The notes below the pieces were generated by a model. That model was given only the letters and a program-made list of their open reading frames with translations, had not been told where the DNA came from and made no database searches. From positions 372,001 through 436,000 of the forward strand of contig OZ025654.1 of NCBI GenBank assembly GCA_964019335.1: a DNA stretch of 64,000 nucleotides, given 5' to 3'. The first letter of the stretch is position 1. The number at the start of each line of letters is the position of its first letter. The stretch comes from Diplonema japonicum (lineage: Eukaryota > Protista > Euglenozoa: Diplonemea). Of this stretch, positions 29,985 to 62,423 are shown in pieces. The translations under genes and the position numbers were made by a program.

Positions 29985-32506
29985 TCACAACAATGTAACC
30001 CCTATCATGCACGACCCGCTCACTTTGTCGCTCGCTGCAATTGCCTGCACCTTGTAACTCGATTTTAGCTCCTTCCCAACTGTGAGCTTTGGTACGAGGT
30101 CTGGCATTTTTAGGTCGATCCTGCCCATGTTGTCCTTCCCGATGAGATCCTTGTCGAAAATCGACACTCTGACACAGTCGGAGGAGGGCACAAGGAACGT
30201 GAATGATTCACGCCATTCCGGGTTAAGCGTCTTTGGAATCACCTTGGAAACCTTTTTCTGCGGGTTCGGATGAGAAGCACCGACACGGCCATCCTTAATC
30301 TCACGAAGCTTCACCTCGCAAAACGGGTCGGAAAGCCCATTGGAATCCATTGAAATCAAGTCGCTCCCGGAATAAAGCGTCACTTTAATCTGAACAGCTG
30401 CTGCACTGACGGGGGCGACAGTACCAGCGGACTTGACCTCACCCTTTCTCCGTTTGTCCTCTGCGTCGGCTCGCTTCTTGGCAAGCTTCATGGTAGTGGT
30501 GGAAACATCATCTTTCGCACCCCCGAAATCGACTGTTTTACCAGTACGATTGACAACACACCCATTTGTGCTGAATTGTCCTTTGATTTGATAATTCGCT
30601 TGTGTTGCTTTCCAATCAGCGGCAGAGAACTTCTCCGGCGTGTCGTATCGCTTCGGCTTGACAGGCGTTGCGAATGTGATTTCTGCCGCATCCTTGTCCT
30701 CAACAAACAGTGAGCACACCATTGATTTGGAAAGCTTCGCTTCCTTCGGCTGTGCCAGCAGGTAGTACTCCGTTCCGGGGGATAACGTTATCTCCAGATA
30801 CAGCTCTCGCTGGGAAGATGATTTTCTCCCAGCGGGCTTCGATGTTGCTCCGTTCACCACTGTCGGGATCCACATTTCTATGGCATCGAGCTCTGAGTCA
30901 GGGTGGCCTTTTGGTACACCACGAGGGTCCTTCTGATAGACAGCGAACCAGCACTTTTGCTTTCTTGACACGGTTATCTTTGCCACGATGTCTGTCACAC
31001 CGCTGTTGTAATTCCCTGCGATGTGTATTTGATCCCATGAGCCGTAGGTGTAGCACACGGAAACCTGGTTGAACCACTTCACAACATCGGCCCACTCCAT
31101 CCAGAAGGAGCCGTCGTCTTGCGCAACGAAGCCGCATTCTTTCTTCATCGCGGGTGTCCATGATTTGTCGGAATCGCTCCACTTCCCCTTCCACTCCTTG
31201 TCGTTGCCCCAAGGGTTCCTGATCATGCACAGCTTGTGGCCGTCCTTCGTTAGCTTCACCGTGATCAAGCTGTAGGAGTGCTCGGTGATCAGACCTACGC
31301 TTTGGTATTTATCCCACATCGCCCTGTGATAATTGAAGGGAGGTAAAAAAAAAAAAGGTATTTTCATACTTCTCGGCGACGGTGTGGAGGTCCTCAGGAA
31401 CGTTCATGAGATTCTTCCCCGGGGTCCCCAGGATTTGTAGGAATTCCTGGAATTTTTCTTTTTTAATACATTCCCACTTCCCCTCCTCTCCAAACCTTGT
31501 TGTCGTTGTCTAGAAGCGTCTGCCACATATCTTCCTTGAGGTCGAAGAGGCGTGCAGGGCAACCGGTTAAGTCGGACATGGCTCTGTTTTTTTTGGGCTT
31601 TCTTTTGTTTCTTCTTTCGGAATACCTGGTGCAGCTCCCTGTTTGGATCGCTGCGTACGACCCGTGCAGCTTCGCGTAGGCCTTCTCAACAAGACACACC
31701 CACAGCTCGTTGGGCTCTTCCCGGTTCCGTGCGAAGGCGGGCTTCGACCCTGAGCACGGGAGGAAGTCATCAACGATCACCGTCTGCCACCACCCGTTCT
31801 TGCAAAGCGTAATCCGGTAACACCCAAGCTCAGGGTCTTGCTGGTCTTCAAACATAGAACGAACAAGGTGCTCGAATTCAGCAACAGATGCCAAAGCACC
31901 CATAAGGTAGCAGTCGGCAAGGGCGCCCTGATCGATATCGTTGGGCTCGATCTTATCCACGAACAAAGTAGGTTTCAAACCAGTTCCCTGTAGGTAAAGT
32001 GCAGGGCGCTTCCAAGGGTACAGTTGAATGATTCGTTTTATCCAGTCGGGCTTCAGTGATGCGTCCTTTGGTGGGAAGTTTAAATCAACGAATCTGACGC
32101 CATGGGCGGCGCACTCGTCGGCAATGTGCTGTGCGGTGACAGTCTTCTTCCCAGACTTCTTCAGCAGCTCCATCACGAACTGCACGTCCGTATCTGTTGC
32201 GTCCTTTGACTCGTTGGCTTGTTTGTCTTTCCAGCTTTTGTCTGGTTCTCCCGAACCGTGGGACTTCGACATCCCTGTCCACGTCCCTGTTACGAACCTG
32301 CTGCTCTCACCGGGGTACACATTCACGACATACTTCCCGTCTTTTTCCGAGGTGCTGCCCAGTGCCCTAACGCTGCCCCCTTTGAAGCCGTAGCTGCATC
32401 GGAACATCTTGTCGCGAAGCTCGTTGTGGAAAACGAGCGTCTTCTCCCCGCCCTCCGGTATCGTCTCCAGGATCAGCCCTGGCTTAGCTTCCGTTTTTGT
32501 GCTCAT
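29985..32506 (-). CDS. Calpain: DUF1935-like, CysPc, domain III and C2 domains; 4 exons (32506-31626, 31583-31496, 31446-31370, 31323-29985)
   Basis: Removing three GT-AG introns joins ORFs 31463..32611 and 29985..31367 in frame. Catalytic triad: QGALADCY, EHSYSL, RNPWG. C2 motifs MDSNGLSDPF and FDKDLIGKDNMG. Confidence 0.9.
31324..31369 (-). other. Spliceosomal intron, 46 nt (calpain intron 3)
   Basis: GTATGA...CACAG; splicing gives AEK-AMWDKY in frame. Confidence 0.85.
31447..31495 (-). other. Spliceosomal intron, 49 nt (calpain intron 2)
   Basis: GTTTGG...TCCAG; removes the in-frame stop and gives DNK-EFLQILGTPG. Confidence 0.85.
31584..31625 (-). other. Spliceosomal intron, 42 nt, in frame (calpain intron 1)
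   Basis: GTATTC...AACAG; removal restores the calpain motif GSCTRAMSDLTG. Confidence 0.8.
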
Positions 32507-32619
32507 TTTTCTTTTTTTTTTGTTGTCGGTAAGGTCCTCCCTCCCCCGCCTTCTTTGTATTTCTTTTCTTCTTTTTTTTTCTTCTTCTTTTGCGCTTTTT
32601 TTTTTCTCCAAATCTCTGT

Positions 32620-45761: not shown

Positions 45762-46988
45762 TCATAACTTACTACTACCGCAATCGAGCACTATATCCAG
45801 CAGCCCGATCACACGGTCAACCTCTTCCTCTGTGTTGTAATGCGCCAAAGAAATCCTGACAGCACCGTGCGCATCCGACAGCCCGAGGTCACTCGCTATC
45901 AAAGGCGCCATCATGTTCCCACTCTTACAGACAACACCACGAGAATTGAGAAACTCCACAACATGGGCAGGAGTGACCCCCTTGGGGATGAAGGACACAA
46001 TGGGCTTATAACATTTCTCCCATTGAGATGAAGCCAGCAGCGTAGCATTCGGGTGATCAACGATATACCTACGCATCTTCACAACCAAAGGCCTCACAAG
46101 CTCATACATCTTGGAATACCCCTCCACAATGAGCTCGCGCTTGGTTCTGCAAACCATTGGAAATACAACCCTTTCCAAATACTTTGCCATGCCTATTATC
46201 CCCGAGTACACAGCCCAGTTCGTCCCTCCCGAACCGTATTCAAAAACAGTTCTGTCAACGTTAAGAAAATCCCATCCTCGCGGGCTTGCATAAAGCACTG
46301 CAGACTGCGGGCACAACATTTTATACAGGGAAAGCGTGTAAAAGTCGGGCAAAAACCGCTGGATGTCAATGTGAGATGAAGAAGCAAAAGCAACACCATC
46401 TACAAAGGAATATGTCCTCGGGAAACTTCTGCAAATATTGCATATTTTCTTCACGTCAATGGTCTCGCCTAAAAGGTTCGACACCTGAGCAACCACCACC
46501 ACAGTGGGTTTTGTATTGTCCAGGGATCGAAGAGCGGAAAGGAGGTCGTCTGGGTTGAAGAACCCTGGTAAGCTTGGGCTGACACACTCGATCATTGTTA
46601 CCTCTGACGGGTTGACGTCGATAAACGGGGTTAAATGAGTTTGATGGTTGTTGTTGCATATGACAAACTGCGGCCGTTGTTTCATCTGCATCATTGCACG
46701 TGTGGCGCTTGCGACGAGTGCCCTGCTTGACGAGCCGATGGAACACCCACCTTCTTCGCTGTTCAGCATTGTTTCCACAAGCCCTTTCCCTTCCTTGATT
46801 ATCGCGTTTACTGCTTCACCCTCCTTGTGCTGCCCAGGCTGCACGCTCAGCTCTGTTAAGTGTTTGTGCATCGCCTTCGTGACCAGCCTTGGAACCAGCG
46901 AGCCTCCTGCATTGTCCATGAACACAGAGTCCGTGGGGTACACGTCAAACTCCTTGCGCAACCGGTGTCTCTCTGCTTCTTGGTTCAT
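45762..46988 (-). CDS. Class V PLP-dependent aminotransferase (cysteine-desulfurase-like, VC1184-type)
   Basis: FMDNAGGS, FVDGVAFA, DFYTLSLYK (PLP lysine), FEYGS and VRISLAHYNTEEEVDR. Confidence 0.88.
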   Translation of the reverse strand: MNQEAERHRLRKEFDVYPTDSVFMDNAGGSLVPRLVTKAMHKHLTELSVQPGQHKEGEAVNAIIKEGKGLVETMLNSEEGGCSIGSSSRALVASATRAMMQMKQRPQFVICNNNHQTHLTPFIDVNPSEVTMIECVSPSLPGFFNPDDLLSALRSLDNTKPTVVVVAQVSNLLGETIDVKKICNICRSFPRTYSFVDGVAFASSSHIDIQRFLPDFYTLSLYKMLCPQSAVLYASPRGWDFLNVDRTVFEYGSGGTNWAVYSGIIGMAKYLERVVFPMVCRTKRELIVEGYSKMYELVRPLVVKMRRYIVDHPNATLLASSQWEKCYKPIVSFIPKGVTPAHVVEFLNSRGVVCKSGNMMAPLIASDLGLSDAHGAVRISLAHYNTEEEVDRVIGLLDIVLDCGSSKL

Positions 46989-50462: not shown

Positions 50463-51013
50463 TTATTCACTCTTCAGAAATTACTTCACGCACTGGGGGG
50501 CCCATTACTTCACGCTAAATCTCATTACTTCACGGTGAAATAATGGCCTGTAAGTAATAGGGGGTTTCCGTAATAATATGCCTCGGTAGGCCAATTTTTT
50601 GCCTCGGTTCGGTTCCCAGTGGGGCTACTTTTTCCTCTCAGTTTGCTAATTTCCCCCTAGGTTCAGCTCAATTGGCCAACTTTTACCTCGGCTCAGTTCC
50701 AAGTTGGACTACTTTTTCCTCCGCCGCGCCAGGTATGAGAGGGCTTGATTAGAGATGGTGACAGTGGCAATGCCAGCTCTTTGTCAACAAAAGGAGGAAC
50801 GCGAACGAACCCCTTGTCACCCCTTAGTGACCCTAGTGGTGAAGTAATTTCAGAGTGTCGCGAAATAAAACCACTTACCTACCGCCAAGTAATGCTTTAT
50901 CGACCTCTCGGTTCCGCATTTTACCATCTCGGGCCCTGCGGGCCCTCGACGATAAAATGACGGAACCTCGAGGTAACGGTAAAGTCATTACTTGTTGGCA
51001 GTAAATAGCTATT
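50463..51013. mobile_element. Second composite palindromic element
   Basis: gaaattacttcac (~50477) pairs with gtgaagtaatttc (~50839). A hairpin centred on gggccctgcgggccc (~50931-50945) follows and ends in aaatagctatt. Confidence 0.65.
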
Positions 51014-51154
51014 GACTTTTTTACACGAAGATTGTTCTTACATTATTCTTGTTTTGCTATATCTTTTTGCCAAAACTCCAGTCAGAATTTTATTATTTTT
51101 AATATGGCCATGTCTTTTTTGATAGGCCGGACTAATATAAAATCGCTTTTTTAA

Positions 51155-51501
51155 AAAAAAGAGTCGGCTGATTGTTGTTTGTGCAAAGCCTACAGTAGGG
51201 ATAAACGGACAAGCTGCCCTCAAAATTTGTTTACTTGTCCAGCAAGGGGGGGGGGGGGGGGGAACTTTTTGATTGTACATGCAGGGTAAAACCTGGAGAA
51301 GTTTGTAACCCGAAGCACGTTGCCAAACGTTCCCTTTTTGTTTAGACAAGTCAAAGACTCGTTCTTGCAAAAAGAAAACCTTTCGAATAGCTGCGAATTT
51401 AGAAATATCACTCCAAGTCAGAATACGGTCTCTTGTTTGTGCAAGCCATTTTCACCTGTAGTAGAGATAAGCAGACAAGCTGCCTCTACTTTCAAAGTTT
51501 G
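51155..51501. repeat. Cluster of repeat families A-B-A
   Basis: A at 51155-51246, B at 51284-51373, A at 51433-51501. Confidence 0.8.
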
Positions 51502-52493
51502 CTTTATTGCAGCAAAAAAGAAAAATAGAAAAAAGAAAGAAAAATAGATTAAGAAGAGAATAGTCAAGAGTCGTTGCCGACACATTCCGTCTTGTACTTA
51601 AATATGGTACGAAAAAATATTTATTGGGCTGCACGGTTTGTGGAATTACTCCACTCCCCAACGCCTCCCTTTTCGGACCTCGCTTTGAAACAGCAGAAAC
51701 AGGGGGGTGCTACGGGCCAAAGAAAACCAAAATAATTGGTGCTTTTCCCGTTTCCATATTAAGTACAAAGTACGGAAGAAGAAGAAAGAAAAAGAAACAA
51801 AGAAGAAAAAGGCAAGGTTTCATACGTGGCACAGAAACCTCCTTTTTTTTTTTCTTCTTTTTCTTTTGTTTGAGTTTGGTATAAAAAAAAAAGAAAGTTA
51901 CAGAAGGTTTTTGCAAAAGTCTTTGAAACGTCTTCTCTCAAAAATATTTTAAAAAAAGATCAAAGATCCATGAACTCCATCATGAAAAGGATAGGAGTTG
52001 TGTTGCTGCGATCGACTAGAAGAAGAACAATATAAAATAATGCATGAAAAAGATGCAGGCCGAGCGATTTTCTGTTCGGAGGGGATCCTCTTGAAGTCCA
52101 CAGACCAGAACGAGTATTCGTTTTCTCTTCTTCGGGGCCCGAATTATTTTATCTTTGCAGTACTACTTTGATGTTCTTTCGAACATTTATCTTCTCTTTT
52201 CTTCTTATTTTTTTCTTTTTTGAAACGCATCAAATACAACAAGGGTTTAGTTACCAGGAAAGAAAGGAAAACGAAAGAAAGGAGGGGGGGGGGGGGGAAC
52301 AGTATTACTTATTTTGATAAAACCCACATTTACTTCAAAGAAAAGGGGGAGTGGGGAGATAAGCTATTTCTTGCTTTATGGGGGGGGGGGGTCTATCTGT
52401 TAATATTTCCCTCTCGAGCATTGCTTAAAATATGGTTCTATACACCTCTCTATAGCACCCATGTATTTCTGCCTCCCTTCTTTTTCCTCCTCC

Positions 52494-55400
52494 CTACACT
52501 AAGAACATCGGATATCTCAGCGAACTATTCGTCTTCAACATATTGACAATCCTGTTGATAGTGGCACTTGAACAGGCCTCTGCCTCGATCGGTGCATAGT
52601 GGCCAGTTTGAAACGCTTCCCAGTATGCAGTGGACCATTCCCACGAAATCTTAACTACTTCTTCATCAAGCCCTATACGCACAAGCCTCGAGTCTTTAAG
52701 CCCAGCAGTGTTCACCTCGTACACCACAGTAGCCTTAGGACCGCTGGATGTCACAAGATACCATTTATCCACGGGCCTGGCGAAAGAGTGAAGAAGAGGC
52801 AAGTTCTTCTCAGAATCATCCGGCATGGGTGTGCAGAATAGACATGTAGTGCACAGTGCCCTGCACGACTCCGAGAGGTTCACTGCCATTGGAACGCAGA
52901 GTCCGTTCACCGCGACGAAACGTTGTGCGCTTGATCCTAAATTACCGCACAAGGTGCTACCTGTTGACAGCCCGACAGAGAGGGTCTTCCCGTTGTGATC
53001 AGCTCGTTTAAAGATGTGGTCGAGAAGCGAGACGCAGCGCAGACTAGTTTCGAAGTGGGAGCTTATCCGCTTTGACGTGTTCCAACCTACTAGTATCGAT
53101 GAGCTGAGCATCCCAACTACGACACCTTCTGTGCGCTCTGCGCATGCTATGACACGTGTTAAGGTATCATTCACCCCATGTACTGTCTCGTCCACGGTTG
53201 CGGAGGTCACGCACACGCAGGCGATCGTCGACGCGGCTACCCGTTCCAGCTTTTCACGAAGAAACTCTGGTGTCTCCTGCACGCTGTCCGAGCTTGTCGT
53301 GAACCCCGAACCTGCGCAAGACGCACGCTTCTCTTCCGTCGACCCGTCGCGTGAATGGGCTCTCATCCGTGTCGGCCGCTTCTGTGCTTTGATCTTTATA
53401 CATGTTTCGATGTGCTCTCTGCGCTTGATCACTTCCTGTGGGATCATGATGTGAATGGTTGCCGCTCCTGCGCCTTTCAGTGCCACCTCTCCCATCGATA
53501 GAACATGCGGTGAGTTCAAACATGCAAGCCCCGAATCCAGAATAGATGAATCCATATTAGACGGTTCTGTCGAAACCTGTTTGATGCAGTCGAGTACATC
53601 GCGTGTGACTGCCACGGCGCCCCCTACACATGCTGCCTCTACACGTGCTGCCCTGTTCACTGTTCCCCCGAAGTAGTCGTAACGTCCCGTTACTCTGTTG
53701 AGCTCTTTCTCTACTGCTCCCCAATGGATCCCGATTCGGATGCGCGGTCCGCACCATTGTTCTTCCACCACCTGAGAGCACGCATCTACGTCTAGCAGTT
53801 CGGAGGGCCAGTGCGCTTTGTAGAGAACCACATGTGCATCGAGCCCGAACTTGCATGCGTCAACAACGGACTCAAAGGCCACCATGAAGGCATCTCCAAT
53901 GGTCTTCACCTCGTACCCGTTGTGTTCTGAGATGCACTCCCGCAAAACGGTGTTGTGTATTTTCAGCCCTTTGTTCATCCCCTCGGGGCACTCCTCCCAC
54001 GAGGCGGTTGACTGTTCGATATCAGTAAACACGATAGCTGCGCTCCCGCTGTCACCAGGCGCAGGAACATTCTTTGGTGAGACCAGAGTTTTAGCTGTTT
54101 GCATCTCAAACAAGGAGTCGGGTAGGTACGGGCGGTACATCTGAAGGTTCTCGATCAGCCGGTAGTACGCCATGTAAAGGTCACTGCTGCTCCCGGAGCT
54201 TGTGTTCAAGTGCTTCGTGGCGGCATCTAAGTTGAACGAGACAAGCGCCTCTGCTATCTTGTGTGCGACCTCGACGCTCTCAACGGCACGCGTTTTCTCA
54301 GCTTCCAGCTTGTCAATATAGTCATATGAGTGCGCTTTGTGCTTTGCTAGGTCAAGGCCTTGCAGTTCAGCTTCCTCAGACGTCCTGACGTCCAATACAA
54401 GCCTCATGCTGAAGTAGATAGCAAAGCTCAACAACACAGCCCATGCAACCACCACGAGAATAGCGACGCACTGGGTTGACAACAGCGTGCCTCCGCCTCC
54501 GTGGAACAGTCCGTAACGCACTGAACCTGTGGTCGCGAGGGCAGCCCTCACCCGTGCCTCATCGGAGAACAGGCCGACAGCAAGCCCGCCCCACAGTCCG
54601 CCGCCGAAGTGCACGGCGCCCGCATCCACTACGTCATCTATCTTCGCGAGGAACACCAGATTAAGTATCACAAAGTAAAAAACTACTGCCACAGCCCCAA
54701 TGATGGGCGCGTATACGGGCGACACGTAAGCACAGCTAGCCGTGATCGAGACAAGCCCGACAAGGACTGTGTTGCAGCAATGTGTCAGCTCGAAGTACCC
54801 GTACAAGATACGCGTGGCAAACATCCCCACGATGCCTGACGTCGCAGACGCCACGAGTGTTGAGATGATGGCGTTTGCCGCGACCTTGCCCCCCCCACCT
54901 GAGAAGGAAACAACGGAGCCGCCGTTGAAGGCGAACCACGCCGTCCACAACAGGAGAGTCCCTGTGGCAAGCTGGAATTTGTTGTGCGGGGCAACGATCT
55001 CGCCCCCTTCAGGGGAGAAGACGCTGATGTTGTCCCTCAGCTTCCGTGGCCCGATCAGCGCAGCAAGTGTAAGTGCATTCGTTCCGCCGAACAAATGAAT
55101 GACAACCGACCCAGAAAAATCAAGTGCACCATCGTTGAGAGAGTCTGTCGACCATGGGCTCAACCACCCCGAGTCGGACCATACCCAGTGCACGACCACA
55201 GGGTACGCAAAAATGGTAACGAAAAATATAATGACAAAATAGGCCTCCAGTGTGATGCGTTCGGCAACGGCGCCTGAGATGATAGTCGCTGCGGTCGTCA
55301 TATAGGTGAAGGAAAGGAAGAAGTGTCCACTAGACTCAGACAGTCCATTGTCTGCGGAGAAAGCGATGCGGTCCCTTGTTATGCCCATGAAAGGAGAGCC

Positions 55401-57200
55401 GCCGCCGTAGGCAATGGAGTATCCGCACAACCACCAGCACAGACCTCCCAAAGCACAGTCTGCGAAGTTCTTGAAGATTATTGAGATTACGGAGCCCGAT
55501 CGCACACACCCTGCTTCCAAAAAGCAGAACCCAAGCTGCATCGAGAACACTAATATCCCACAAATGAGGTTCCACATGATATTAATATCCGTCGACATTA
55601 ACTGGATCTTTGCAGTCAGCTCCTCAGTCCTATTCAGCAGTTCATAGATGGAGGGAGACATATTGGTTAGTTCTGTTGCGAGGGATTCGCCCCCCACTCC
55701 GTCAATGAACATCACGACCAACAGCAGCGAGGTGACACAGGAGCACCGCAGTGCCGCATTCACGTTGCTTTTGAGAAACTTCCACAGCCCTGGTTCGGTG
55801 ATCGTGTCGTCAACGAGGCTGACGTCTATGTTCTCATTGACGTTCATATCCGTACTAAAGTAGGTGCGGGCATAGTCGCAATAATTACCGTGGTGTATCT
55901 TCACGTCCCACTCCTCTGTGTGGTCGTACACGTCGTAGCCTATTGTGACTTTTATCAGCATAAGCACGGACATCGACCAGACCACCCCCCAGGAGAAGAT
56001 GCTTAGGAATCCTATAAGTTGCGATGCCAGAAGCTCGCCTGAACCTCCGGCAAGCAGGCCGTATTCTAAGCCCGTTTGCCCAGGGTACGTCATGCTCAGT
56101 ACCCGCTGTGTTGAGAACAGCCCCGTCGCGACGACCCCCCACGCAGCTGGTAGAAGGTACGTAGCCACAACGCGCATAGGGTCGTCCATGAGCTTGTACG
56201 TTCCGTTCGCCCACCAAACTGCGTAGTATAGAAACACTGCAATTGCGGTCGTGAATGGAACGTGTGACAACGGAATATATGGGACAGCGGTAGAGGCCAT
56301 AGATGCCCCGCATAGCACACAGTGCAGCAGGTGGTGGATGTCAAGGTAGCAATAGAAGCTCTGCGTGATGCAGCAGCTCAGAAGAGCTCCAACCCCGATA
56401 CTAAGCATGGTCCCCGTGCAGCAATGGGCCACCGACCGCGGGGAAAACCCTGCCTCACCTAACCCGCTGGAATTCAAAGCAAAAAAACACATCAAAAGGA
56501 ACAGGGTGCCCGTGGACTGGTACAGTTTGTTGTGCGACGCGACGAACAGCTGCCCTGAAGGAGAGAAAACCGAGATCTTCCCTGGAAGGGAACGGGGCGG
56601 CACGCTGAGCACAGACGCAAGCGTCGCCCCGCCAGCAAAAGCCATCGCAGCGGCCATTCCGTTCACGTCGTACAGACCACTGAGCACCCTGTTTGAGGAC
56701 ATGGGGTTCAACCATCCTGCAGACGCCCACACCCAGTGAAGAGACACAGGGAATGCATACAACCCGCATACTCCTGTGACCAGTGCATATCTTACAATAC
56801 CAAGCCTGCAGACCACAGATGAGGAAAATAGAGTAACGCCAATGAGGGACAGGCCATAAGACGGGAGGTACGTGGCTGCATTTACCTCGTTGAACATATA
56901 TGTTGAAGCTGTCGACATGTAAGAACCGGTGGGGGAGAAGGCCTGGTTGAAGCCGACCATCCACCACACGACGGCACCTATGGAAAGATCCACCAAGTGC
57001 TGGAACAGTGCCCCGATCACGCCCCCACTAGGCAGGGACCCGCTTTTAATCATCCCTAGAGCGAGCGGCAACAACATCTCAATTAACCCACAGAAGAGTA
57101 TCCAGGTCTCTCCTACATCCTTTCGGTGTACGCCCAGATCCTTCCACAGGCTGTCTAATGTATCGCTTGTGTTCTGCAGGAGGCCGTCCGAGTAATTCAT
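52494..57200 (-). CDS. Tandem ammonium transporter (Amt-Amt) fused to a class III adenylate cyclase and a degenerate cyclase domain
   Basis: Likely start MNYSDG (ATG 57200). Amt2 motifs: MQLGFCFLEAG, IISGAVAER, LDFSGSVVIH, WFAFNGGS, IDDVVDAGAVH. Amt1 is divergent. Cyclase motifs: IVFTDIEQST, YEVKTIGDAFM, DYFGGTVNRAARV. Confidence 0.93.
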   Translation of the reverse strand: MNYSDGLLQNTSDTLDSLWKDLGVHRKDVGETWILFCGLIEMLLPLALGMIKSGSLPSGGVIGALFQHLVDLSIGAVVWWMVGFNQAFSPTGSYMSTASTYMFNEVNAATYLPSYGLSLIGVTLFSSSVVCRLGIVRYALVTGVCGLYAFPVSLHWVWASAGWLNPMSSNRVLSGLYDVNGMAAAMAFAGGATLASVLSVPPRSLPGKISVFSPSGQLFVASHNKLYQSTGTLFLLMCFFALNSSGLGEAGFSPRSVAHCCTGTMLSIGVGALLSCCITQSFYCYLDIHHLLHCVLCGASMASTAVPYIPLSHVPFTTAIAVFLYYAVWWANGTYKLMDDPMRVVATYLLPAAWGVVATGLFSTQRVLSMTYPGQTGLEYGLLAGGSGELLASQLIGFLSIFSWGVVWSMSVLMLIKVTIGYDVYDHTEEWDVKIHHGNYCDYARTYFSTDMNVNENIDVSLVDDTITEPGLWKFLKSNVNAALRCSCVTSLLLVVMFIDGVGGESLATELTNMSPSIYELLNRTEELTAKIQLMSTDINIMWNLICGILVFSMQLGFCFLEAGCVRSGSVISIIFKNFADCALGGLCWWLCGYSIAYGGGSPFMGITRDRIAFSADNGLSESSGHFFLSFTYMTTAATIISGAVAERITLEAYFVIIFFVTIFAYPVVVHWVWSDSGWLSPWSTDSLNDGALDFSGSVVIHLFGGTNALTLAALIGPRKLRDNISVFSPEGGEIVAPHNKFQLATGTLLLWTAWFAFNGGSVVSFSGGGGKVAANAIISTLVASATSGIVGMFATRILYGYFELTHCCNTVLVGLVSITASCAYVSPVYAPIIGAVAVVFYFVILNLVFLAKIDDVVDAGAVHFGGGLWGGLAVGLFSDEARVRAALATTGSVRYGLFHGGGGTLLSTQCVAILVVVAWAVLLSFAIYFSMRLVLDVRTSEEAELQGLDLAKHKAHSYDYIDKLEAEKTRAVESVEVAHKIAEALVSFNLDAATKHLNTSSGSSSDLYMAYYRLIENLQMYRPYLPDSLFEMQTAKTLVSPKNVPAPGDSGSAAIVFTDIEQSTASWEECPEGMNKGLKIHNTVLRECISEHNGYEVKTIGDAFMVAFESVVDACKFGLDAHVVLYKAHWPSELLDVDACSQVVEEQWCGPRIRIGIHWGAVEKELNRVTGRYDYFGGTVNRAARVEAACVGGAVAVTRDVLDCIKQVSTEPSNMDSSILDSGLACLNSPHVLSMGEVALKGAGAATIHIMIPQEVIKRREHIETCIKIKAQKRPTRMRAHSRDGSTEEKRASCAGSGFTTSSDSVQETPEFLREKLERVAASTIACVCVTSATVDETVHGVNDTLTRVIACAERTEGVVVGMLSSSILVGWNTSKRISSHFETSLRCVSLLDHIFKRADHNGKTLSVGLSTGSTLCGNLGSSAQRFVAVNGLCVPMAVNLSESCRALCTTCLFCTPMPDDSEKNLPLLHSFARPVDKWYLVTSSGPKATVVYEVNTAGLKDSRLVRIGLDEEVVKISWEWSTAYWEAFQTGHYAPIEAEACSSATINRIVNMLKTNSSLRYPMFLV

Positions 57201-57754
57201 TCCTTTGGTGGTTAGAGGAGTTAGACGTTTAAAAAAGTTCTTAAAAAAGAAAAGGCGAGCGGTGAGGGAAATGATATCTGTCGGGAGGAGGGGGAGGGAA
57301 AATACCCGTAAAGGGAATCTATCCACGGAAAGACGAGGGGGTTAACTTAAAGGCAAAAAACCCACCAAGATGAAAAAATGAAGAAGAAGAAGAAACAAGA
57401 AAAAAAAAAAAAAAAAAAACAGATTCATTTCTACTCAGAAAAAAAAAGAAAGAAAAATTAAAAACATTTTCAGTTTCTTTTCATTCAGAAAAAAAAGAAG
57501 AAGAAAAAAAAAAGAATCACTAAATAATGAGTCATTATGTACTCGGGTTTCCGAGTTCTAAGGTGGCTGGCACCTCCGACTCATTTCAGCGGTAAGAAGT
57601 CATTTATGTCACACTTTTCCACAGTCATTTGAGTCATTCACTGCTGCTCCCTGGCCGCTGTTTCAAGAGCTGCGACGAAAGGTGAAATAAGAAACTTTAA
57701 AAAAAAATAGAAATTGCTTTTGAAAATATGCCGCCTAGGTCTTTTCTCGGCTCG

Positions 57755-57794
<40 letters not shown>

Positions 57795-58663
57795 AACAAA
57801 GCAGAAGAAAGAAAGCGAAAAAAAGAAGAAAACCGAGACAAGTCAAAGACTCACTTGGCACAAAGGAAATCTCTTTCTTCTTTTTTTTTGGCTTTTTCTT
57901 CCGAGCTGAAAGAAGTGAATACTTCATACCGCTGCTCGGCACACAACAAGCGACAAATTCTTAGTCATCAACTCTTTACTTTTTCTTTTTGCTCACAAGG
58001 AAGCGGTACAAACCTTCTTACGGGAGGAAATCCGACAAGGGGGGGGTCAAAACACAAAAAAGTGTCAGGAGTCACACGTCAGAAAGGTCAGCCGCTTTCC
58101 CTAGCATGAGAAGGAATAAAAAAATAGAAAAAGAAAAAGAGAAAAAAATGGGGCTTTTATTGCAACACTAAGTGGCGTTAAGTGTGCAACGAAGGATGAA
58201 CTGTCTCTACTTGATTACAGGAGGCGCACAGCTTCTTCTGTATTCCGCGTCATCCTTAATGCGTGAGGTGCAACTCAACCCTAGACGGGGCGTCCCGGGG
58301 AACTAAGATTCTGTGCTCGTGCAGTTTGCTGCTTGTTCGTCACCCTGAGCGTCTGCAATACGTTTTTCCACAACCAGTGGAGGCCAACAGTGAACAACAC
58401 ATCTGATGTACTTCTTATATATCTAAGTTATCCACCACCCTAAAAAACGAAGAAAAAAACAAGCGGAAAAAAAAGGCTGTACAGATTAGGGAAGAAGAAG
58501 AAGAAGAAAAAAAAAAATATCCCCTGTAGGAGTGGCACGGGGCTTGAGGCCACCTTGTACATCTTACAGAAATCACCCAGTAAAAGGGGGGAAATTACTT
58601 ATTCAGTTTCTTTCGAACGGTTATTAGGTACAAAGCTTACTTAAAAGGATCTCAAAACCATTT

Positions 58664-59185
58664 TCAAAGAAGAAACATTTTGCTGGTACGTCTTCCCGAA
58701 ACAGGCGGACAGCTAGGGGGTGCCTGCTTAGGGATCGGAGGAGCAGCAGCAGCAGACGCCAGCTGCACGTACACCTTCTGCGCAATGGGGCGATTCTCAA
58801 TCATCTCAAATGAAGGTATCTCATTGACAGGGTCTTCAGGCCGATAAACTGAGGCAATAAGACGGATGAGATCGCTTGTGGCCATTGATGCAGACAGAGC
58901 GTCGTACTGGTTAGGCGCTCCCTTCACAGCTTGCACATCGTCCTCATACAGAACCATTGTCTCGATGTGTGAAATGGCAATGCACCGCTCTATAGATGTT
59001 TGAAGGTCGGCAGCATAGCCCTCCTTGTCAAGAAGAAGTACCAGCCGCTTTGACTGCCGACCGTCCCTCCCAGGACGCCCTGACACTTGGAAGAAGTGCA
59101 GCGTGCATGCACCGCTGGAGCTGCTCGCAGACGTAAGGTACTCTACAGGCAGGCCGACGTGGCTTGGGTACTGAGGAATCGGCAT
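58664..59185 (-). CDS. PH-like domain protein, short paralog of 62581..63420 (possibly decaying)
   Basis: About 400 nt nearly identical to 62990-63385; lacks the coiled coil. Confidence 0.65.
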   Translation of the reverse strand: MPIPQYPSHVGLPVEYLTSASSSSGACTLHFFQVSGRPGRDGRQSKRLVLLLDKEGYAADLQTSIERCIAISHIETMVLYEDDVQAVKGAPNQYDALSASMATSDLIRLIASVYRPEDPVNEIPSFEMIENRPIAQKVYVQLASAAAAPPIPKQAPPSCPPVSGRRTSKMFLL

Positions 59186-60456: not shown

Positions 60457-62423
60457 TCAAAAGAAATCATAATCAGACAGATCAGGACAAAACGTGGGAT
60501 TTTCGTAAGTGTCAACACCGGCTGCGTGCATAAAACCAAGAACGGTATTCACCACAAGAGAAGACGCACCAAGAACAAGCAGCGCAAGAGGAGGGAGCGC
60601 CTCCCAGCTTGTGATAATCGTGGTGTAGCTAGGCCGGCTGTCTACCGCTTCACCAGCTGAAGACGACATCCCAGCCGGCTTCCCCGTAACCTGCGGTGGG
60701 TTACTCAACGGGCTGCCGTACTCGACATACGTCTTTTCGACGCTTGGAGGAGGGGTGTGCGTGAATCTCCTTTTTTTTTTTTTTTTTTTTCTTTTTCTTT
60801 TTTTTTTAAATATTCCCCATACCTTTTAAACTTAAACCATAAAAGCCCCGGAAGGATAAACCCCAAGGCAGATGCAGCTAAACCTCCGGTAAATTCCAAA
60901 ACAAGCCCTAACTGATCGGATGAGAGAAGCACCCCAGGAGGCAATGTCGCGGCAAAGATGATAGCAGTCAACGCATAATGACGTTTGTTGCTCGTGTCGC
61001 CCTTGAGCACCATTGTGGTCAATGCCTGTCTGACTACAAAGAACTCCATGGGGAAGGTGAAGATCATCGTGAATGCGAGGAGAATCCTGGCGACGTTGAT
61101 CGCCTGGTCGCTCTCGGGGGAGAAGTTGTTCAAAATGTTCGGCCGCGTACACCTGAGGAACGTCCCGTACCCGGCGATGGACAGCACGGCGGAGAGAACG
61201 GTGGCGATCCCGATGCTGATGTAAACCACCTTGGGCCAGTCGTCCTTGTTCTTCAAGGAATTCCGCACCAAAAACGACGAATGATGACACACATACGCAA
61301 ACGCTATCACACCAAACGCAGGGAAGAAATTCTTATGAGCAAAGGCCAACCCACTTTCGTCGTACTGTGCATACGGCATAGAACCTAACGTTACGGAGAA
61401 TCGTGTGTATCCTTGTTCGGTTTCCCAATTAACGGATATCTCAGGATGCGACAGTGTAGCAGCACCACGGGGTACCGTTGTGACATCGAGAACGACTGTT
61501 TCCTTGGTGGCGAGGTTCGCGTTGGAGATGTTCTCGCAACGCGGAAACGGGTTTCGTAGAACCTCCGCACCGGCGTAGATTGCAAACGGTGCAACGGAGT
61601 CAACAAGGGTGTCCATGGTTGTGAAGTTGAACTGGAACCCAGCATCGTTTTTCGTGACGCGAGACAATGTGATGTTTTCGTACCCATACTGACAATCGCT
61701 TCGTATGGTCCACACTCCGGGTTGCCCGACGCTGATCCAACCTACGTTGTTGTTCGACAGGTCTTCAAATGTCCCGGCGACATCAGCGGATCTGACAACC
61801 ACAATAATCAACAAGGCAAAAACCCCCAGTATCGACACAGCCGATGTCTTCGCAAGCACCCCGATATCCTTGAATGACGACAACGGCAGGCACACGAAGC
61901 AACCGCACACAACAATGCACAGTTCCCTCGAGCCTCCCATGTATTTTGCGATGTCCCATGTGCTGAATACCGGGTAAAGCGTATCACCTAGAATGATCAA
62001 ATATGACAGCATGGCGCCGTAAGCAAACAGCGCCATTGATATGGACACCACGTAGTAGCCTGTCTTGCCAAGGAGAGAGTGGCACAGGATTTCATAGTCG
62101 TTTATTTTCATTTTGTCGCCGAGGTCGATGATTAATCGGACGGAATACGCTGTCAGGACACCCGTGGCGAGGAGGACGATGAAGGAGAAGAATGCGCCGC
62201 CCTCCTCCATTGCGAAGGGGAGGCCGATGATGCCAGCGCCTACGATGGAGTTTACAAAGTTCGCAACGCCACTCCACATCGAGTGCGTCCCCCGAATGCC
62301 ATGCACTTCTCTTACGTCGCCCGCTGCTGCATCGACTGTCTGGTCCCCCACCACCTCGATATCTACCTCTTCCATTTCAACCTCTTCATGGTCATTCTCC
62401 CTCGCTGCCAAGTCTTCTTCCAT
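60457..62423 (-). CDS. AAAP/SLC38 (SLC38A11-like) amino acid transporter; 2 exons with intron 60770(or 60767)-60822
   Basis: NFVNSIVGAGIIGLPFA, FAYVCHH, GYGTF, FTFPME and LGFILPG. A GTATGG...AG intron joins the ORF to 60457..60708, which supplies the last TM. Confidence 0.9.

What the first reader, a model, noticed from the sequence alone, without database searches (positions are those of the whole stretch)
52494..57200. Amt-Amt-adenylate cyclase fusion: candidate ammonium-sensing cAMP transceptor
Seen: one uninterrupted ORF encoding Amt1 (~57120-55930), Amt2 (~55590-54330), a helical linker (LIENLQMYRPYLP), a class III cyclase (~54040-53460) and a second cyclase-like domain. The cyclase keeps both metal-binding Asp (FTD, IGD), the adenine-specifying Lys (VKT) and Asp (DYFG), and the N..R pair (VNRAAR). 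Known: Amt fusions to histidine kinase and diguanylate cyclase domains act as ammonium sensors in bacteria, whereas trypanosomatid receptor cyclases use single-pass periplasmic-binding-protein ectodomains. Inference: this protein converts ammonium directly into a cAMP signal in a euglenozoan. I do not know of a characterised example of this architecture.
Basis: partly seen in the sequence, partly recalled or inferred. Interest (0 to 1): 0.92.

Follow-up and report, generated by a model that had tools for sequence, protein, structure and literature searches.

The report
Ammonium-transporter pair fused to adenylate cyclase
A diplonemid protist gene joins two ammonium-transporter domains (one degenerate, one intact) to an intact adenylate cyclase and a dead cyclase-like domain, so it is a real, conserved but untested candidate for an ammonium receptor that makes cAMP directly.

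Summary
Window 52494-57200 (minus strand) is one 1568-codon ORF with this order:
- a degenerate Amt domain (Amt1);
- one extra membrane helix;
- an intact Amt domain (Amt2);
- a conserved helical linker;
- a class III cyclase domain (CHD1) with all seven catalytic residues, of adenylate-cyclase type and closest to Trypanosoma brucei GRESAG4;
- a second domain (CHD2) with a cyclase fold and none of the catalytic residues.

Contigs of runs from three studies match the window without a difference, and single contigs in two of those studies (the third in overlapping pieces) join both Amt domains, the linker and the start of CHD1. One contig carries a spliced-leader tail 3 nt upstream of the ATG.

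The genome is diplonemid-like. The architecture recurs in Diplonema papillatum and Artemidia motanka, and Amt1-Amt2 in D. ambulator. The same double-Amt module is also fused to protein kinases and to cNMP-binding/ion-channel outputs, which argues that it is a sensor module.

The ammonium-to-cAMP function is still an inference. The published "sensor Amt" signature residues are present in Amt2, but also in this genome's stand-alone Amts, so they do not discriminate. I found no paper describing this architecture, although homologues sit in public databases labelled as ammonium transporters. First-stage notes flag related paralogues elsewhere in this genome. I rate it a new variant of a known kind and of high interest.

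The parts
57283..57516 (-). Polypyrimidine tracts upstream of the gene, the kind of signal that precedes a trans-splice site
   Evidence: Runs of 16-30 pyrimidines lie here. Within 50500-58700 such tracts are intergenic, apart from one 16-nt run inside the ORF.
57203..57204 (-). AG trans-splice acceptor, leaving a 2-3 nt 5' UTR before the ATG at 57200
   Evidence: an X6 contig ends at 57203 with loose letters whose reverse complement is GTTTCTGTACTTTATT, the 3' end of the spliced leader. AG at 57204-57203; the leader's 3' 19-mer occurs 217 times in this genome against 0 for the control.
52494..57200 (-). Complete coding sequence, 1568 codons plus stop
55872..57104 (-). Amt1 (aa 33-443): a degenerate Amt-fold domain, probably non-conducting
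   Evidence: Pfam 99.9 bits. Aligned to Sd-Amt1: twin-His -> M186/Y348, Phe gate -> L117/L242, S219 equivalent -> G246, while W158 and D178 are kept. It is the fast-evolving part: tree branches ~1.0-1.4 against 0.2-0.4 for Amt2, and 20-25% identity to the unnamed ENA homologues.
55695..55751 (-). Extra transmembrane helix (aa 484-502) that returns the chain to the outside, so that Amt2 starts N-out
   Evidence: It is the only hydrophobic segment between Amt1 TM11 and Amt2 TM1. The NMS and NRT sequons in the following loop fit an extracellular location (sequence; inference).
54324..55574 (-). Amt2 (aa 543-959): an intact Amt domain
   Evidence: Pfam 314 bits. Q555, F558, E562, N578, Y633, T639, W674, D694, H702, F758, S762, N810 and H864 are invariant in 13 homologues, bar one S762G and one alignment gap at W674. 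The best PDB sequence hits are the sensor Amts 6eu6 and 8qj3/8qpf.
54072..54323 (-). Cytoplasmic linker (aa 960-1043), covering the end of the Amt C-terminal-region motif, helices, and the conserved motif NLQMYRPYLPDSLF (about 54108-54158)
   Evidence: Identity to homologues is 35-45%, close to CHD1's 42-47% in the ENA homologues. The YRPYLPDALF motif precedes the catalytic domain in the aligned paralogous cyclases that reach it. AlphaFold2 predicts a helix at aa 1005-1021.
53415..54071 (-). CHD1 (aa 1044-1262): a catalytically complete class III cyclase domain of adenylate type
   Evidence: Pfam 97.5-102 bits. D1060, K1099, D1103, R1155, D1175, N1182 and R1186 are conserved in this protein and 9 of the 12 aligned homologues that reach this domain. 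Best PDB hits are T. brucei GRESAG4.3/4.1 (Foldseek TMt 0.72-0.73).
52542..53279 (-). CHD2 (aa 1308-1553): a pseudo-cyclase domain with the cyclase fold and no catalytic residues
   Evidence: AlphaFold2 pLDDT 87.2, pTM 0.87. Foldseek against PDB: every hit shown is a class III cyclase, best E 2.6e-10. hhalign in register with CHD1 places T, G, S, S, A, P, N at the seven catalytic positions. It follows CHD1 in >=130 paralogues.

Best explanation
The gene encodes a polytopic membrane receptor-cyclase of a diplonemid.

Shown:
- One trans-spliced ORF encodes, in order, a degenerate Amt domain, a single topology-resetting helix, an intact Amt domain and a conserved helical linker.
- The linker ends in the family's YRPYLPDSLF motif and leads into a complete adenylate-cyclase catalytic domain of kinetoplastid type, followed by a catalytically dead cyclase-fold domain.

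Inferred mechanism:
- NH4+ is recruited at the outer site of Amt2 (W674/S762).
- It enters the pore past Y633/F758 to the H702/H864 pair.
- Occupancy or passage changes the position of TM11 and of the Amt C-terminal region (E..GLD...H....Y, aa ~938-958).
- The linker helices transmit this change to CHD1. Because CHD1 carries both halves of the active site, it must pair with a CHD1 of a neighbouring chain to make cAMP.

On this reading ammonium availability sets cAMP synthesis. Amt1 and CHD2 would be non-catalytic scaffolding or regulatory domains. CHD2 may, for example, occupy the CHD1 dimer face in the off state.

Whether Amt2 also transports ammonium (a transceptor) or only binds it (a receptor) is open.
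For: Architecture and residues:
- Pfam domains.
- The Amt2 pore and recruitment residues are essentially invariant across 13 homologues.
- The full CHD1 catalytic set aligns to GRESAG4 structures.
- CHD2 has a cyclase fold but no catalytic residues.

The gene is real:
- Contigs of four runs from three studies match the window with no difference, and single contigs in two studies span Amt1 to the start of CHD1.
- There is a spliced-leader junction at 57203.
- Polypyrimidine tracts lie outside the ORF apart from one 16-nt run.

Conservation:
- Amt-Amt-CHD1-CHD2 recurs in unnamed ENA homologues (P0004, P0006-P0009) and in Artemidia motanka transcripts (P0039, P0041); D. papillatum has Amt-CHD1-CHD2 models, one with an Amt1 remnant at its cut N-terminus; the D. 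ambulator transcript holds Amt1-Amt2 only.
- The Amt2-CHD1 linker is close to CHD1 in conservation (35-45% against 42-61% identity).

Sensor-module argument: related double-Amt modules are fused to protein kinases and to cNMP-binding/ion-channel outputs in Artemidia, Namystynia and Hemistasia.

Precedent: bacterial Amt-HK (Ks-Amt5) and Amt-GGDEF (Sd-Amt1) are demonstrated ammonium receptors. In Sd-Amt1 the twin-His pair is needed for activation (PMC11152129). These two proteins are the best PDB sequence matches of Amt2.
Against: - There are no functional data of any kind.
- The N1/N2 and exit-constriction residues proposed as a sensor-Amt signature (Q, F, E, N, T, N) are present in Amt2. They are equally present in the stand-alone 475-534-aa Amts of this genome, so they do not mark Amt2 as a sensor. 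Only the outer Phe-gate F->Y change tracks the Amts that carry C-terminal tails.
- Amts are trimers and class III cyclases act as dimers. No HAMP domain is found, so the coupling geometry is unknown.
- The two-domain AlphaFold2 model has pTM 0.50, so it says nothing reliable about how CHD1 and CHD2 pack.
- Several homologues have lost the CHD1 catalytic residues yet keep Amt2 intact (P0005, P0010, P0014, P0015). cAMP synthesis is therefore not essential to every member.
- The kind of run X6 (RNA or DNA) is not on record. The spliced-leader evidence rests on 16 loose letters of one contig.
Confidence: 0.55

Rival explanations
1. The Amt domains serve only as a membrane anchor and oligomerisation scaffold, much as the 6-TM bundles of mammalian cyclases were long viewed. 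The cyclase would be regulated by something else, such as phosphorylation, pH, bicarbonate or partner proteins, and not by ammonium.
For: - Amt1 has lost its pore residues, so an Amt fold can persist here without a transport function.
- This genome holds >=144 cyclase genes with the same CHD1-CHD2 cassette and other N-terminal parts. The cassette is therefore a generic output.
- The sensor signature is not discriminating.
Against: - Every pore and recruitment residue of Amt2 is essentially invariant across 13 diverged homologues, while Amt1 drifts. A mere anchor would not need W674, D694, H702, F758, S762 and H864.
- The Amt2-CHD1 linker is conserved.
Confidence: 0.17
2. The coupling runs the other way. 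The protein is mainly an ammonium transporter, and its cytoplasmic cyclase and pseudo-cyclase domains act as a nucleotide-binding regulatory tail that gates transport.
For: - Amt2 has a full transporter residue set and the canonical C-terminal-region motif that controls transport in plant AMT1 and in Mep2 (established knowledge of the family).
- Paralogues and homologues with only degenerate cyclase-like tails exist (L004, L005, L007, P0005, P0014, P0015).
Against: - CHD1 keeps all seven catalytic residues in this protein and 9 of the 12 homologues that reach the domain, which is unnecessary for a binding-only module.
- The genome has separate stand-alone Amts for uptake (L009, L010).
Confidence: 0.13
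3. It is a receptor-cyclase, but the ligand sensed by the Amt module is not NH4+. Candidates are methylated amines, another small cation, or a gas, as proposed for some Rh proteins.
For: All tail-bearing Amts of this clade carry Tyr instead of the outer gate Phe, whereas the stand-alone paralogues keep Phe. That could alter selectivity.
Against: The rest of the NH4+ recruitment and deprotonation apparatus is canonical and invariant. In AmtB the outer Phe is reported to tolerate substitution (from memory, not checked here).
Confidence: 0.08
4. It is an artefact or a decaying gene: a chimeric assembly that joins an Amt gene to one of the many cyclase genes, or a pseudogene.
For: Short-read contigs break at 53875-53924, a stretch of CHD1 whose 31-mers are shared with paralogous cyclases. 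The join between the first ~50 aa of CHD1 and the rest therefore rests on the window's own assembly.
Against: - The contig that carries both Amt domains already includes the linker and the first ~50 aa of CHD1 in single contigs of two studies (X1, X4).
- Depths on both sides of the break are similar.
- The ORF is open for 1568 codons.
- The same full architecture is found in several other species, in Artemidia as single transcripts.
Confidence: 0.02

Closest known systems
Bacterial sensor Amts (ammonium receptors): Ks-Amt5 (Amt-histidine kinase, PDB 6eu6) and Sd-Amt1 (Amt-HAMP-GGDEF, PDB 8qj3/8qpf)
   Same: - An Amt domain is fused at its cytoplasmic C-terminus, through a helical linker, to a dimer-requiring signalling enzyme.
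- Amt2's best PDB sequence matches are exactly these proteins.
- All pore residues and the N1/N2 ligand equivalents are present.
- It faces the same trimer-versus-dimer symmetry problem (PMC11152129).
   Different: - It is eukaryotic.
- The output is a class III adenylate cyclase, not a kinase or diguanylate cyclase.
- No HAMP domain is detected.
- It has two Amt domains in one chain joined by an extra helix, and a pseudo-cyclase domain follows the catalytic one.
- The signature residues are shared with non-fused paralogues.
Trypanosomatid receptor-type adenylate cyclases (T. brucei ESAG4/GRESAG4; PDB 1fx2, 1fx4)
   Same: - The catalytic domain is closest to these in sequence and fold.
- It has a homodimer-type residue set.
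- It belongs to a large, tandemly arrayed gene family.
   Different: - The sensor part is a 23-helix double-Amt module rather than a large periplasmic-binding-protein-like ectodomain with a single transmembrane helix (established knowledge, not tested here).
- A second, dead cyclase-fold domain follows.
Tandem-cyclase-domain enzymes: human soluble AC (4cm0 and others) and the C1-C2 of membrane ACs (AC9)
   Same: There are two cyclase-fold domains in one chain. Foldseek aligns ~500 columns of the two-domain model to the sAC and AC9 soluble domains.
   Different: In sAC and tmAC the catalytic residues are split between C1 and C2, so that one composite site forms. Here CHD1 has all of them and CHD2 none, so a CHD1-CHD2 pair would be inactive. 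The relative orientation in the model is not like sAC (rmsd >20 A) and is of low confidence.
Fungal Mep2 ammonium transceptor
   Same: It is a eukaryotic Amt with an intact pore and the conserved C-terminal regulatory region, proposed to signal ammonium availability to the cAMP/PKA pathway (PMC5890159, abstract only, listed).
   Different: Mep2 has no enzymatic output domain, and its link to PKA is indirect and unresolved. Here the cyclase is covalently attached.
Ciliate and apicomplexan ion-channel/transporter-cyclase fusions (K+-channel-AC, P-type-ATPase-GC)
   Same: A polytopic transport-protein fold is fused to class III cyclase domains in a protist (from memory, not tested here).
   Different: The membrane module is different, and so are the lineage and the cyclase subtype.

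Membership tests
Amt/Mep/Rh (PF00909), Amt2 domain | Pfam profile match over the full 11-helix domain | tested here: met
   314 bits over profile positions 2-399 of 399.
Amt/Mep/Rh (PF00909), Amt2 domain | Recruitment site W148/S219, D160, Phe gate F107/F215 and twin-His H168/H318 (AmtB numbering) | tested here: met
   W674, S762, D694, F758, H702 and H864 are present and essentially invariant in 13 homologues. The outer gate Phe is Tyr (Y633) in all of them.
Amt/Mep/Rh (PF00909), Amt1 domain | Twin-His pair and Phe gate | tested here: not met
   M186/Y348 and L117/L242, with only W158 and D178 kept. The fold is retained (Pfam 99.9 bits), so this is a pseudo-Amt.
Class III nucleotidyl cyclase (PF00211), CHD1 | Two metal-binding Asp, a substrate-specifying Lys/Asp pair, and transition-state Asn and Arg | tested here: met
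   D1060, D1103, K1099, D1175, N1182, R1186 and R1155 align to GRESAG4. The K/D pair indicates ATP.
Class III nucleotidyl cyclase (PF00211), CHD1 | Cyclase activity, and dimerisation to form the active site | not testable with these tools
   This needs an enzyme assay or a multimer structure.
Class III nucleotidyl cyclase, CHD2 | Cyclase fold | tested here: met
   AlphaFold2 pLDDT 87, pTM 0.87. Foldseek returns 185 PDB hits at E<=1e-3; every hit shown is a cyclase.
Class III nucleotidyl cyclase, CHD2 | Catalytic residues | tested here: not met
   T, G, S, S, A, P, N sit at the seven positions (hhalign register). Pfam gives only E 0.17.
Sensor Amt / ammonium receptor (AmR) | Amt domain C-terminally fused to a cytoplasmic signalling enzyme | tested here: met
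   The fusion is conserved across species.
Sensor Amt / ammonium receptor (AmR) | N1/N2 site ligands and the exit constriction (Sd-Amt1 Q22, F25, E29, N45, T104, N269) | tested here: inconclusive
   All are present in Amt2, but also in the stand-alone Amts L009, L010 and L011 of the same genome. In this lineage they are not diagnostic.
Sensor Amt / ammonium receptor (AmR) | Ammonium-dependent output | not testable with these tools
   This needs biochemistry.
Trypanosomatid receptor-type adenylate cyclase | Large extracellular binding-protein-like domain plus a single transmembrane helix N-terminal to the catalytic domain | tested here: not met
   The N-terminal 1000 aa are two Amt domains plus one linking helix. 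Only the catalytic domain is of this type.
C1-C2 pseudo-heterodimeric cyclases (tmAC, sAC) | Complementary split of catalytic residues between the two domains | tested here: not met
   CHD1 is complete and CHD2 is empty.

The most novel reading that the evidence does not exclude
Diplonemids use a double-Amt module as a general ammonium receptor that is wired directly to several second-messenger and phosphorylation outputs: adenylate cyclase here, and protein kinases and cNMP-binding/ion-channel modules in relatives. On this reading the present protein would be the first eukaryotic receptor in which ammonium binding or passage through an Amt pore directly switches cAMP synthesis. It would also be the first euglenozoan receptor-type cyclase with an identifiable ligand.
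Probability: 0.4. Interest if true: 0.85.

Novelty: new variant of a known kind. Interest (0 to 1): 0.74.

Why it matters
Three open problems meet here.

1. No ligand is established for the large receptor-type adenylate cyclase families of Euglenozoa, which include the trypanosome ESAG4/GRESAG4 enzymes (this statement is from memory). This protein attaches the same type of catalytic domain to a sensor whose ligand can be guessed and titrated.

2. How eukaryotic Amt/Mep "transceptors" pass an ammonium signal to the cAMP/PKA pathway is unresolved. A covalent Amt-cyclase is a natural minimal system for studying that coupling.

3. Sensor Amts have so far been structurally and biochemically defined only in bacteria. 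A eukaryotic version adds three new features: a pseudo-Amt partner domain, a pseudo-cyclase domain, and a trimer-versus-dimer symmetry problem.

Diplonemids are among the most diverse marine heterotrophs, so ammonium sensing may matter for their ecology.

Tried and rejected
I could not fetch the contigs or name the organisms of the ENA homologues P0004-P0011.
- The look-up of sequencing runs returned no run on record as RNA. Read laying gave only contigs, so transcript ends and expression levels cannot be read. The only RNA-like evidence is one spliced-leader-tailed contig in X6.
- I considered using the AmR signature residues to classify Amt2 as a sensor. I rejected this because the stand-alone paralogues share them.
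- I considered an intramolecular CHD1-CHD2 catalytic pair like C1-C2. I rejected it because CHD2 has none of the complementary residues. The two-domain model is not confidently packed (pTM 0.50; rmsd >20 A to sAC).
- Profile-profile comparison of CHD1 with CHD2 is weak (probability 6.6%, E 0.0055). The homology claim therefore rests on the fold search.
- I considered that the fused Amts came from bacterial sensor Amts. The tree does not place them together: the bacterial sensors group nearer to the stand-alone paralogues (quick tree, midpoint root, long branches, so this is weak evidence).
- Literature searches for this architecture found nothing relevant.
- Both structure-prediction jobs went on the cytoplasmic half. 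The double-Amt membrane part and any oligomer were not modelled.
Full report
**1. The observation**

The minus strand carries an open frame from 57326 to 52494. Its first ATG is at 57200, giving 1568 aa.

Pfam finds four matches:
- Ammonium_transp at aa 33-436: 99.9 bits, full-length but divergent.
- Ammonium_transp at aa 543-959: 314 bits.
- Guanylate_cyc at aa 1052-1216: 97.5-102 bits.
- A sub-threshold cyclase match (E 0.17) in the last 302 aa.

Every ORF of 276 aa or more in the window lies on the same strand, as in a euglenozoan polycistron.

**2. Is the gene real and expressed?**

Logan contigs from four runs in three studies lie on 51800-57700 with no substitution, indel or alternative joint.
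- In X1 and X4 one contig (53895-57366) carries Amt1, Amt2, the linker and the first ~50 aa of the cyclase domain (X3: 53896-57325; X6 only in short overlapping pieces), so the Amt-cyclase junction is not an assembly chimera.
- Contigs break only at 53875-53924, where 31-mers are shared with the many paralogous cyclases. Depth is similar on both sides of the break.

In run X6 a contig stops at 57203 and continues with 16 letters whose reverse complement is GTTTCTGTACTTTATT.
- The 19-mer CAGTTTCTGTACTTTATTG occurs 217 times in this genome, against 0 for the reversed control.
- It sits in the context CCAACGATTCTAAAGCTACAGTTTCTGTACTTTATTG.
- That sequence differs by two bases from the one spliced-leader type in PMC3795323 that starts AACCAACG instead of AACTAA. 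From memory, that type is the Diplonema leader.
- An AG lies at 57204-57203, and long polypyrimidine tracts lie just upstream.

The mRNA therefore appears to be trans-spliced 2-3 nt before the ATG at 57200. Inside the ORF there is only one 16-nt pyrimidine run.

Two caveats apply. The kind of run X6 is not on record, and contigs cannot show transcript ends with certainty.

**3. The organism**

The genome is 62.5 Mb in 132 contigs. Three lines of evidence point to a diplonemid distinct from the named species:
- the spliced-leader type (section 2);
- the nearest named homologues, which are Diplonema ambulator (68% identity in Amt2) and D. papillatum;
- further relatives in the hemistasiids Artemidia, Namystynia and Hemistasia.

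**4. Anatomy of the membrane half**

*Amt2.* Aligned to Ks-Amt5 and Sd-Amt1, Amt2 has:
- the recruitment Trp and Ser (W674, S762);
- the conserved Asp (D694);
- the inner gate Phe (F758);
- the twin-His pair (H702, H864);
- equivalents of the Sd-Amt1 N1/N2 and exit residues Q22, F25, E29, N45, T104 and N269.

These positions are invariant in 13 homologues apart from one S762G and one alignment gap at W674. The outer gate Phe is Tyr (Y633) throughout.

*Amt1.* It keeps the fold but has M186/Y348 for the His pair, L117/L242 for the gate and G246 for the Ser. It evolves three to five times faster than Amt2 (tree branches ~1.0-1.4 against 0.2-0.4). Its identity to the unnamed ENA homologues is 20-25%, against 53-58% for Amt2.

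*The connecting helix.* A single hydrophobic helix (aa 484-502) lies between the two domains. An 11-helix Amt ends inside the cell, so this helix is what lets Amt2 begin outside. N-glycosylation sequons in the N-terminus and in the loop after the helix fit that topology (inference).

*An important negative.* The "sensor" signature residues are also present in this genome's stand-alone Amts (L009, L010, L011). Only the F->Y change at the outer gate tracks the Amts that carry C-terminal tails.

**5. Anatomy of the cytoplasmic half**

*Linker.* After TM11 comes the canonical Amt C-terminal-region motif (EAELQGLDLAKHKAHSYDY), then helices, then NLQMYRPYLPDSLF.
- This last motif precedes the catalytic domain in the aligned paralogous cyclases that reach it. 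From memory, it resembles the cyclase transducer element of class IIIa/b cyclases.
- The linker is 35-45% identical between homologues, close to the catalytic domain's 42-47% in the ENA homologues.

*CHD1.* Its best solved relatives are T. brucei GRESAG4.3/4.1 (Foldseek TMt 0.72-0.73). It has both metal Asp, the Lys/Asp adenine pair, and the Asn and Arg residues. It is therefore a homodimer-type adenylate cyclase.

*CHD2.* The C-terminal domain was modelled from an alignment of 30 paralogues (pLDDT 87, pTM 0.87).
- Every solved structure shown among its matches is a class III cyclase (185 hits at E<=1e-3).
- In register with CHD1 it has T, G, S, S, A, P, N at the seven catalytic positions.
- It is therefore a pseudo-cyclase and cannot complement CHD1 the way C2 complements C1.

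**6. Family context**

*Within this genome:*
- There are at least 144 cyclase genes, mostly in tandem arrays, and at least 130 of them carry the same CHD1-CHD2 cassette.
- There are about a dozen Amt genes.
- One further Amt-cyclase fusion has a single, divergent Amt (C2:496039-498405).
- One double-Amt gene has only a degenerate tail (C90).
- Several single Amts have 300-400-aa tails, and two to three are stand-alone.

*Across public proteins*:
- Amt-Amt-CHD1-CHD2 is found in Artemidia motanka and in unnamed ENA assemblies; D. papillatum has Amt-CHD1-CHD2 models (one with an Amt1 remnant) and the D. ambulator transcript holds Amt1-Amt2 only.
- Related double-Amt modules are fused to protein kinases (Artemidia, Namystynia).
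- They are also fused to cNMP-binding or ion-channel parts (Namystynia, Hemistasia).
- A weak CHD2-like domain often lies directly after Amt2 in these families.
- Other fusions occur: an Amt-PAS-GAF-cyclase and two further Amt-cyclase types in unnamed metagenome and ENA contigs, and a truncated Mesostigma viride model with the start of a cyclase-like domain.

Recombination of one membrane module with several signalling outputs is the usual mark of a sensor domain.

**7. Mechanism**

*Shown:* the architecture, the residue sets, the conservation pattern and the fold assignments.

*Inferred:*
- NH4+ occupancy or passage in Amt2 moves TM11 and the C-terminal region.
- The conserved linker relays this to CHD1, whose pairing with another chain's CHD1 sets cAMP synthesis.
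- Amt1 and CHD2 are scaffolding or regulatory domains.

The precedent is Sd-Amt1. There, ammonium raises diguanylate cyclase activity, the twin-His double mutant is locked off, and a trimeric sensor drives a dimeric output (PMC11152129).

The rival readings (anchor only, tail regulates transport, other ligand, artefact) are weighed in their own sections.

**8. Novelty**

No paper in the searchable library describes an Amt-adenylate cyclase protein. Public records label the D. papillatum proteins only as "putative ammonium transporter 1 member 5".

The principle of an Amt fold repurposed as a receptor fused to an enzyme is known from bacteria. The eukaryotic setting, the cyclase output, the double-Amt arrangement and the pseudo-cyclase domain are new. 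I therefore rate it a new variant of a known kind.

First-stage notes of this scan flag the same stretch (s1-864687) and what appear to be the related paralogues on other pieces of this genome.

**9. Limits**

- No RNA run is on record.
- The membrane half and oligomers were not modelled.
- The tree is a quick search with long branches.

Noticed in passing
G000 genome-wide, e.g. C109:10000-210000, C28:58000-140000, C52:333000-421000, C2:836000-872000: The genome has a very large family of class III cyclase genes: at least 144 matches, mostly in tandem arrays, with ORFs of ~700-1000 aa. They share a cassette of YRPYLP motif, complete catalytic domain and dead cyclase-fold domain. Their N-terminal 200-300 aa were not examined.
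   Followed up: partly
G000:C2:496039-498405 (+), locus L012:1040-3406: This is a second, unrelated-looking Amt-cyclase fusion in the same genome. It has a single, very divergent Amt (163 bits) that has lost the Trp, the Phe gate and the signature residues, fused to a cyclase domain (69.7 bits). It is identical in its Amt part to library protein P0109.
   Followed up: partly
G000:C90:216206-220312 (+), locus L004:1207-5313, and L005, L006, L007, L008: A double-Amt gene and four single-Amt genes carry 300-400-aa tails with no Pfam match. Some tails match the CHD2 pseudo-cyclase profile weakly, and L005 shares a 22-aa stretch (50% identity) with the query region that holds the YRPYLP motif. L004's Amt2 and L005 are nearly identical, which suggests a recent duplication.
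   Followed up: partly
Proteins P0043, P0045, P0046, P0012, P0044, P0047, P0016 (Artemidia motanka, Namystynia karyoxenos, Hemistasia): In hemistasiid diplonemid transcriptomes, double-Amt modules with both halves well conserved are fused to protein kinase domains or to cNMP-binding/ion-transport domains. The proteins are 1800-2800 aa long.
   Followed up: partly
Proteins P0129, P0128, P0116, P0077: Amt-cyclase fusions exist outside the diplonemid family:
- P0129: Amt-PAS-GAF-Guanylate_cyc (211 bits) on small ENA contigs.
- P0128 and P0116: an Amt followed directly by a cyclase-like domain, in metagenomes.
- P0077: a truncated Mesostigma viride model ending in the start of a cyclase-like domain.
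Their origins were not resolved.
   Followed up: no
G000 genome-wide; loci L001:1480-1520 and L002:1480-1520: The spliced-leader 3' 19-mer occurs 217 times, scattered over most contigs and often near contig ends, and not only in one array. In L001 it follows an A-run, which may indicate retroposed leader-bearing copies.
   Followed up: no
window 29985-32608 (-): A calpain-like gene is split over two adjacent ORFs. Peptidase_C2 profile positions 1-170 fall in 31463-32608, and positions 208-296 plus a C2 domain fall in 29985-31364. This could be an intron, a frameshift or a broken gene.
   Followed up: no
window 60705-62420 (-) and 45762-46985 (-): Two nearby genes on the same strand are nitrogen-related: an Aa_trans amino-acid transporter a few kb upstream (60705-62420) and a class V aminotransferase further downstream (45762-46985). 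In polycistronic euglenozoan genomes this is probably coincidence.
   Followed up: no
window 52187-52393 and 57367-57522: Low-complexity tracts flank the gene, including a poly-C/G run near 52300-52393. Short-read contigs of all runs break or lose depth there.
   Followed up: no
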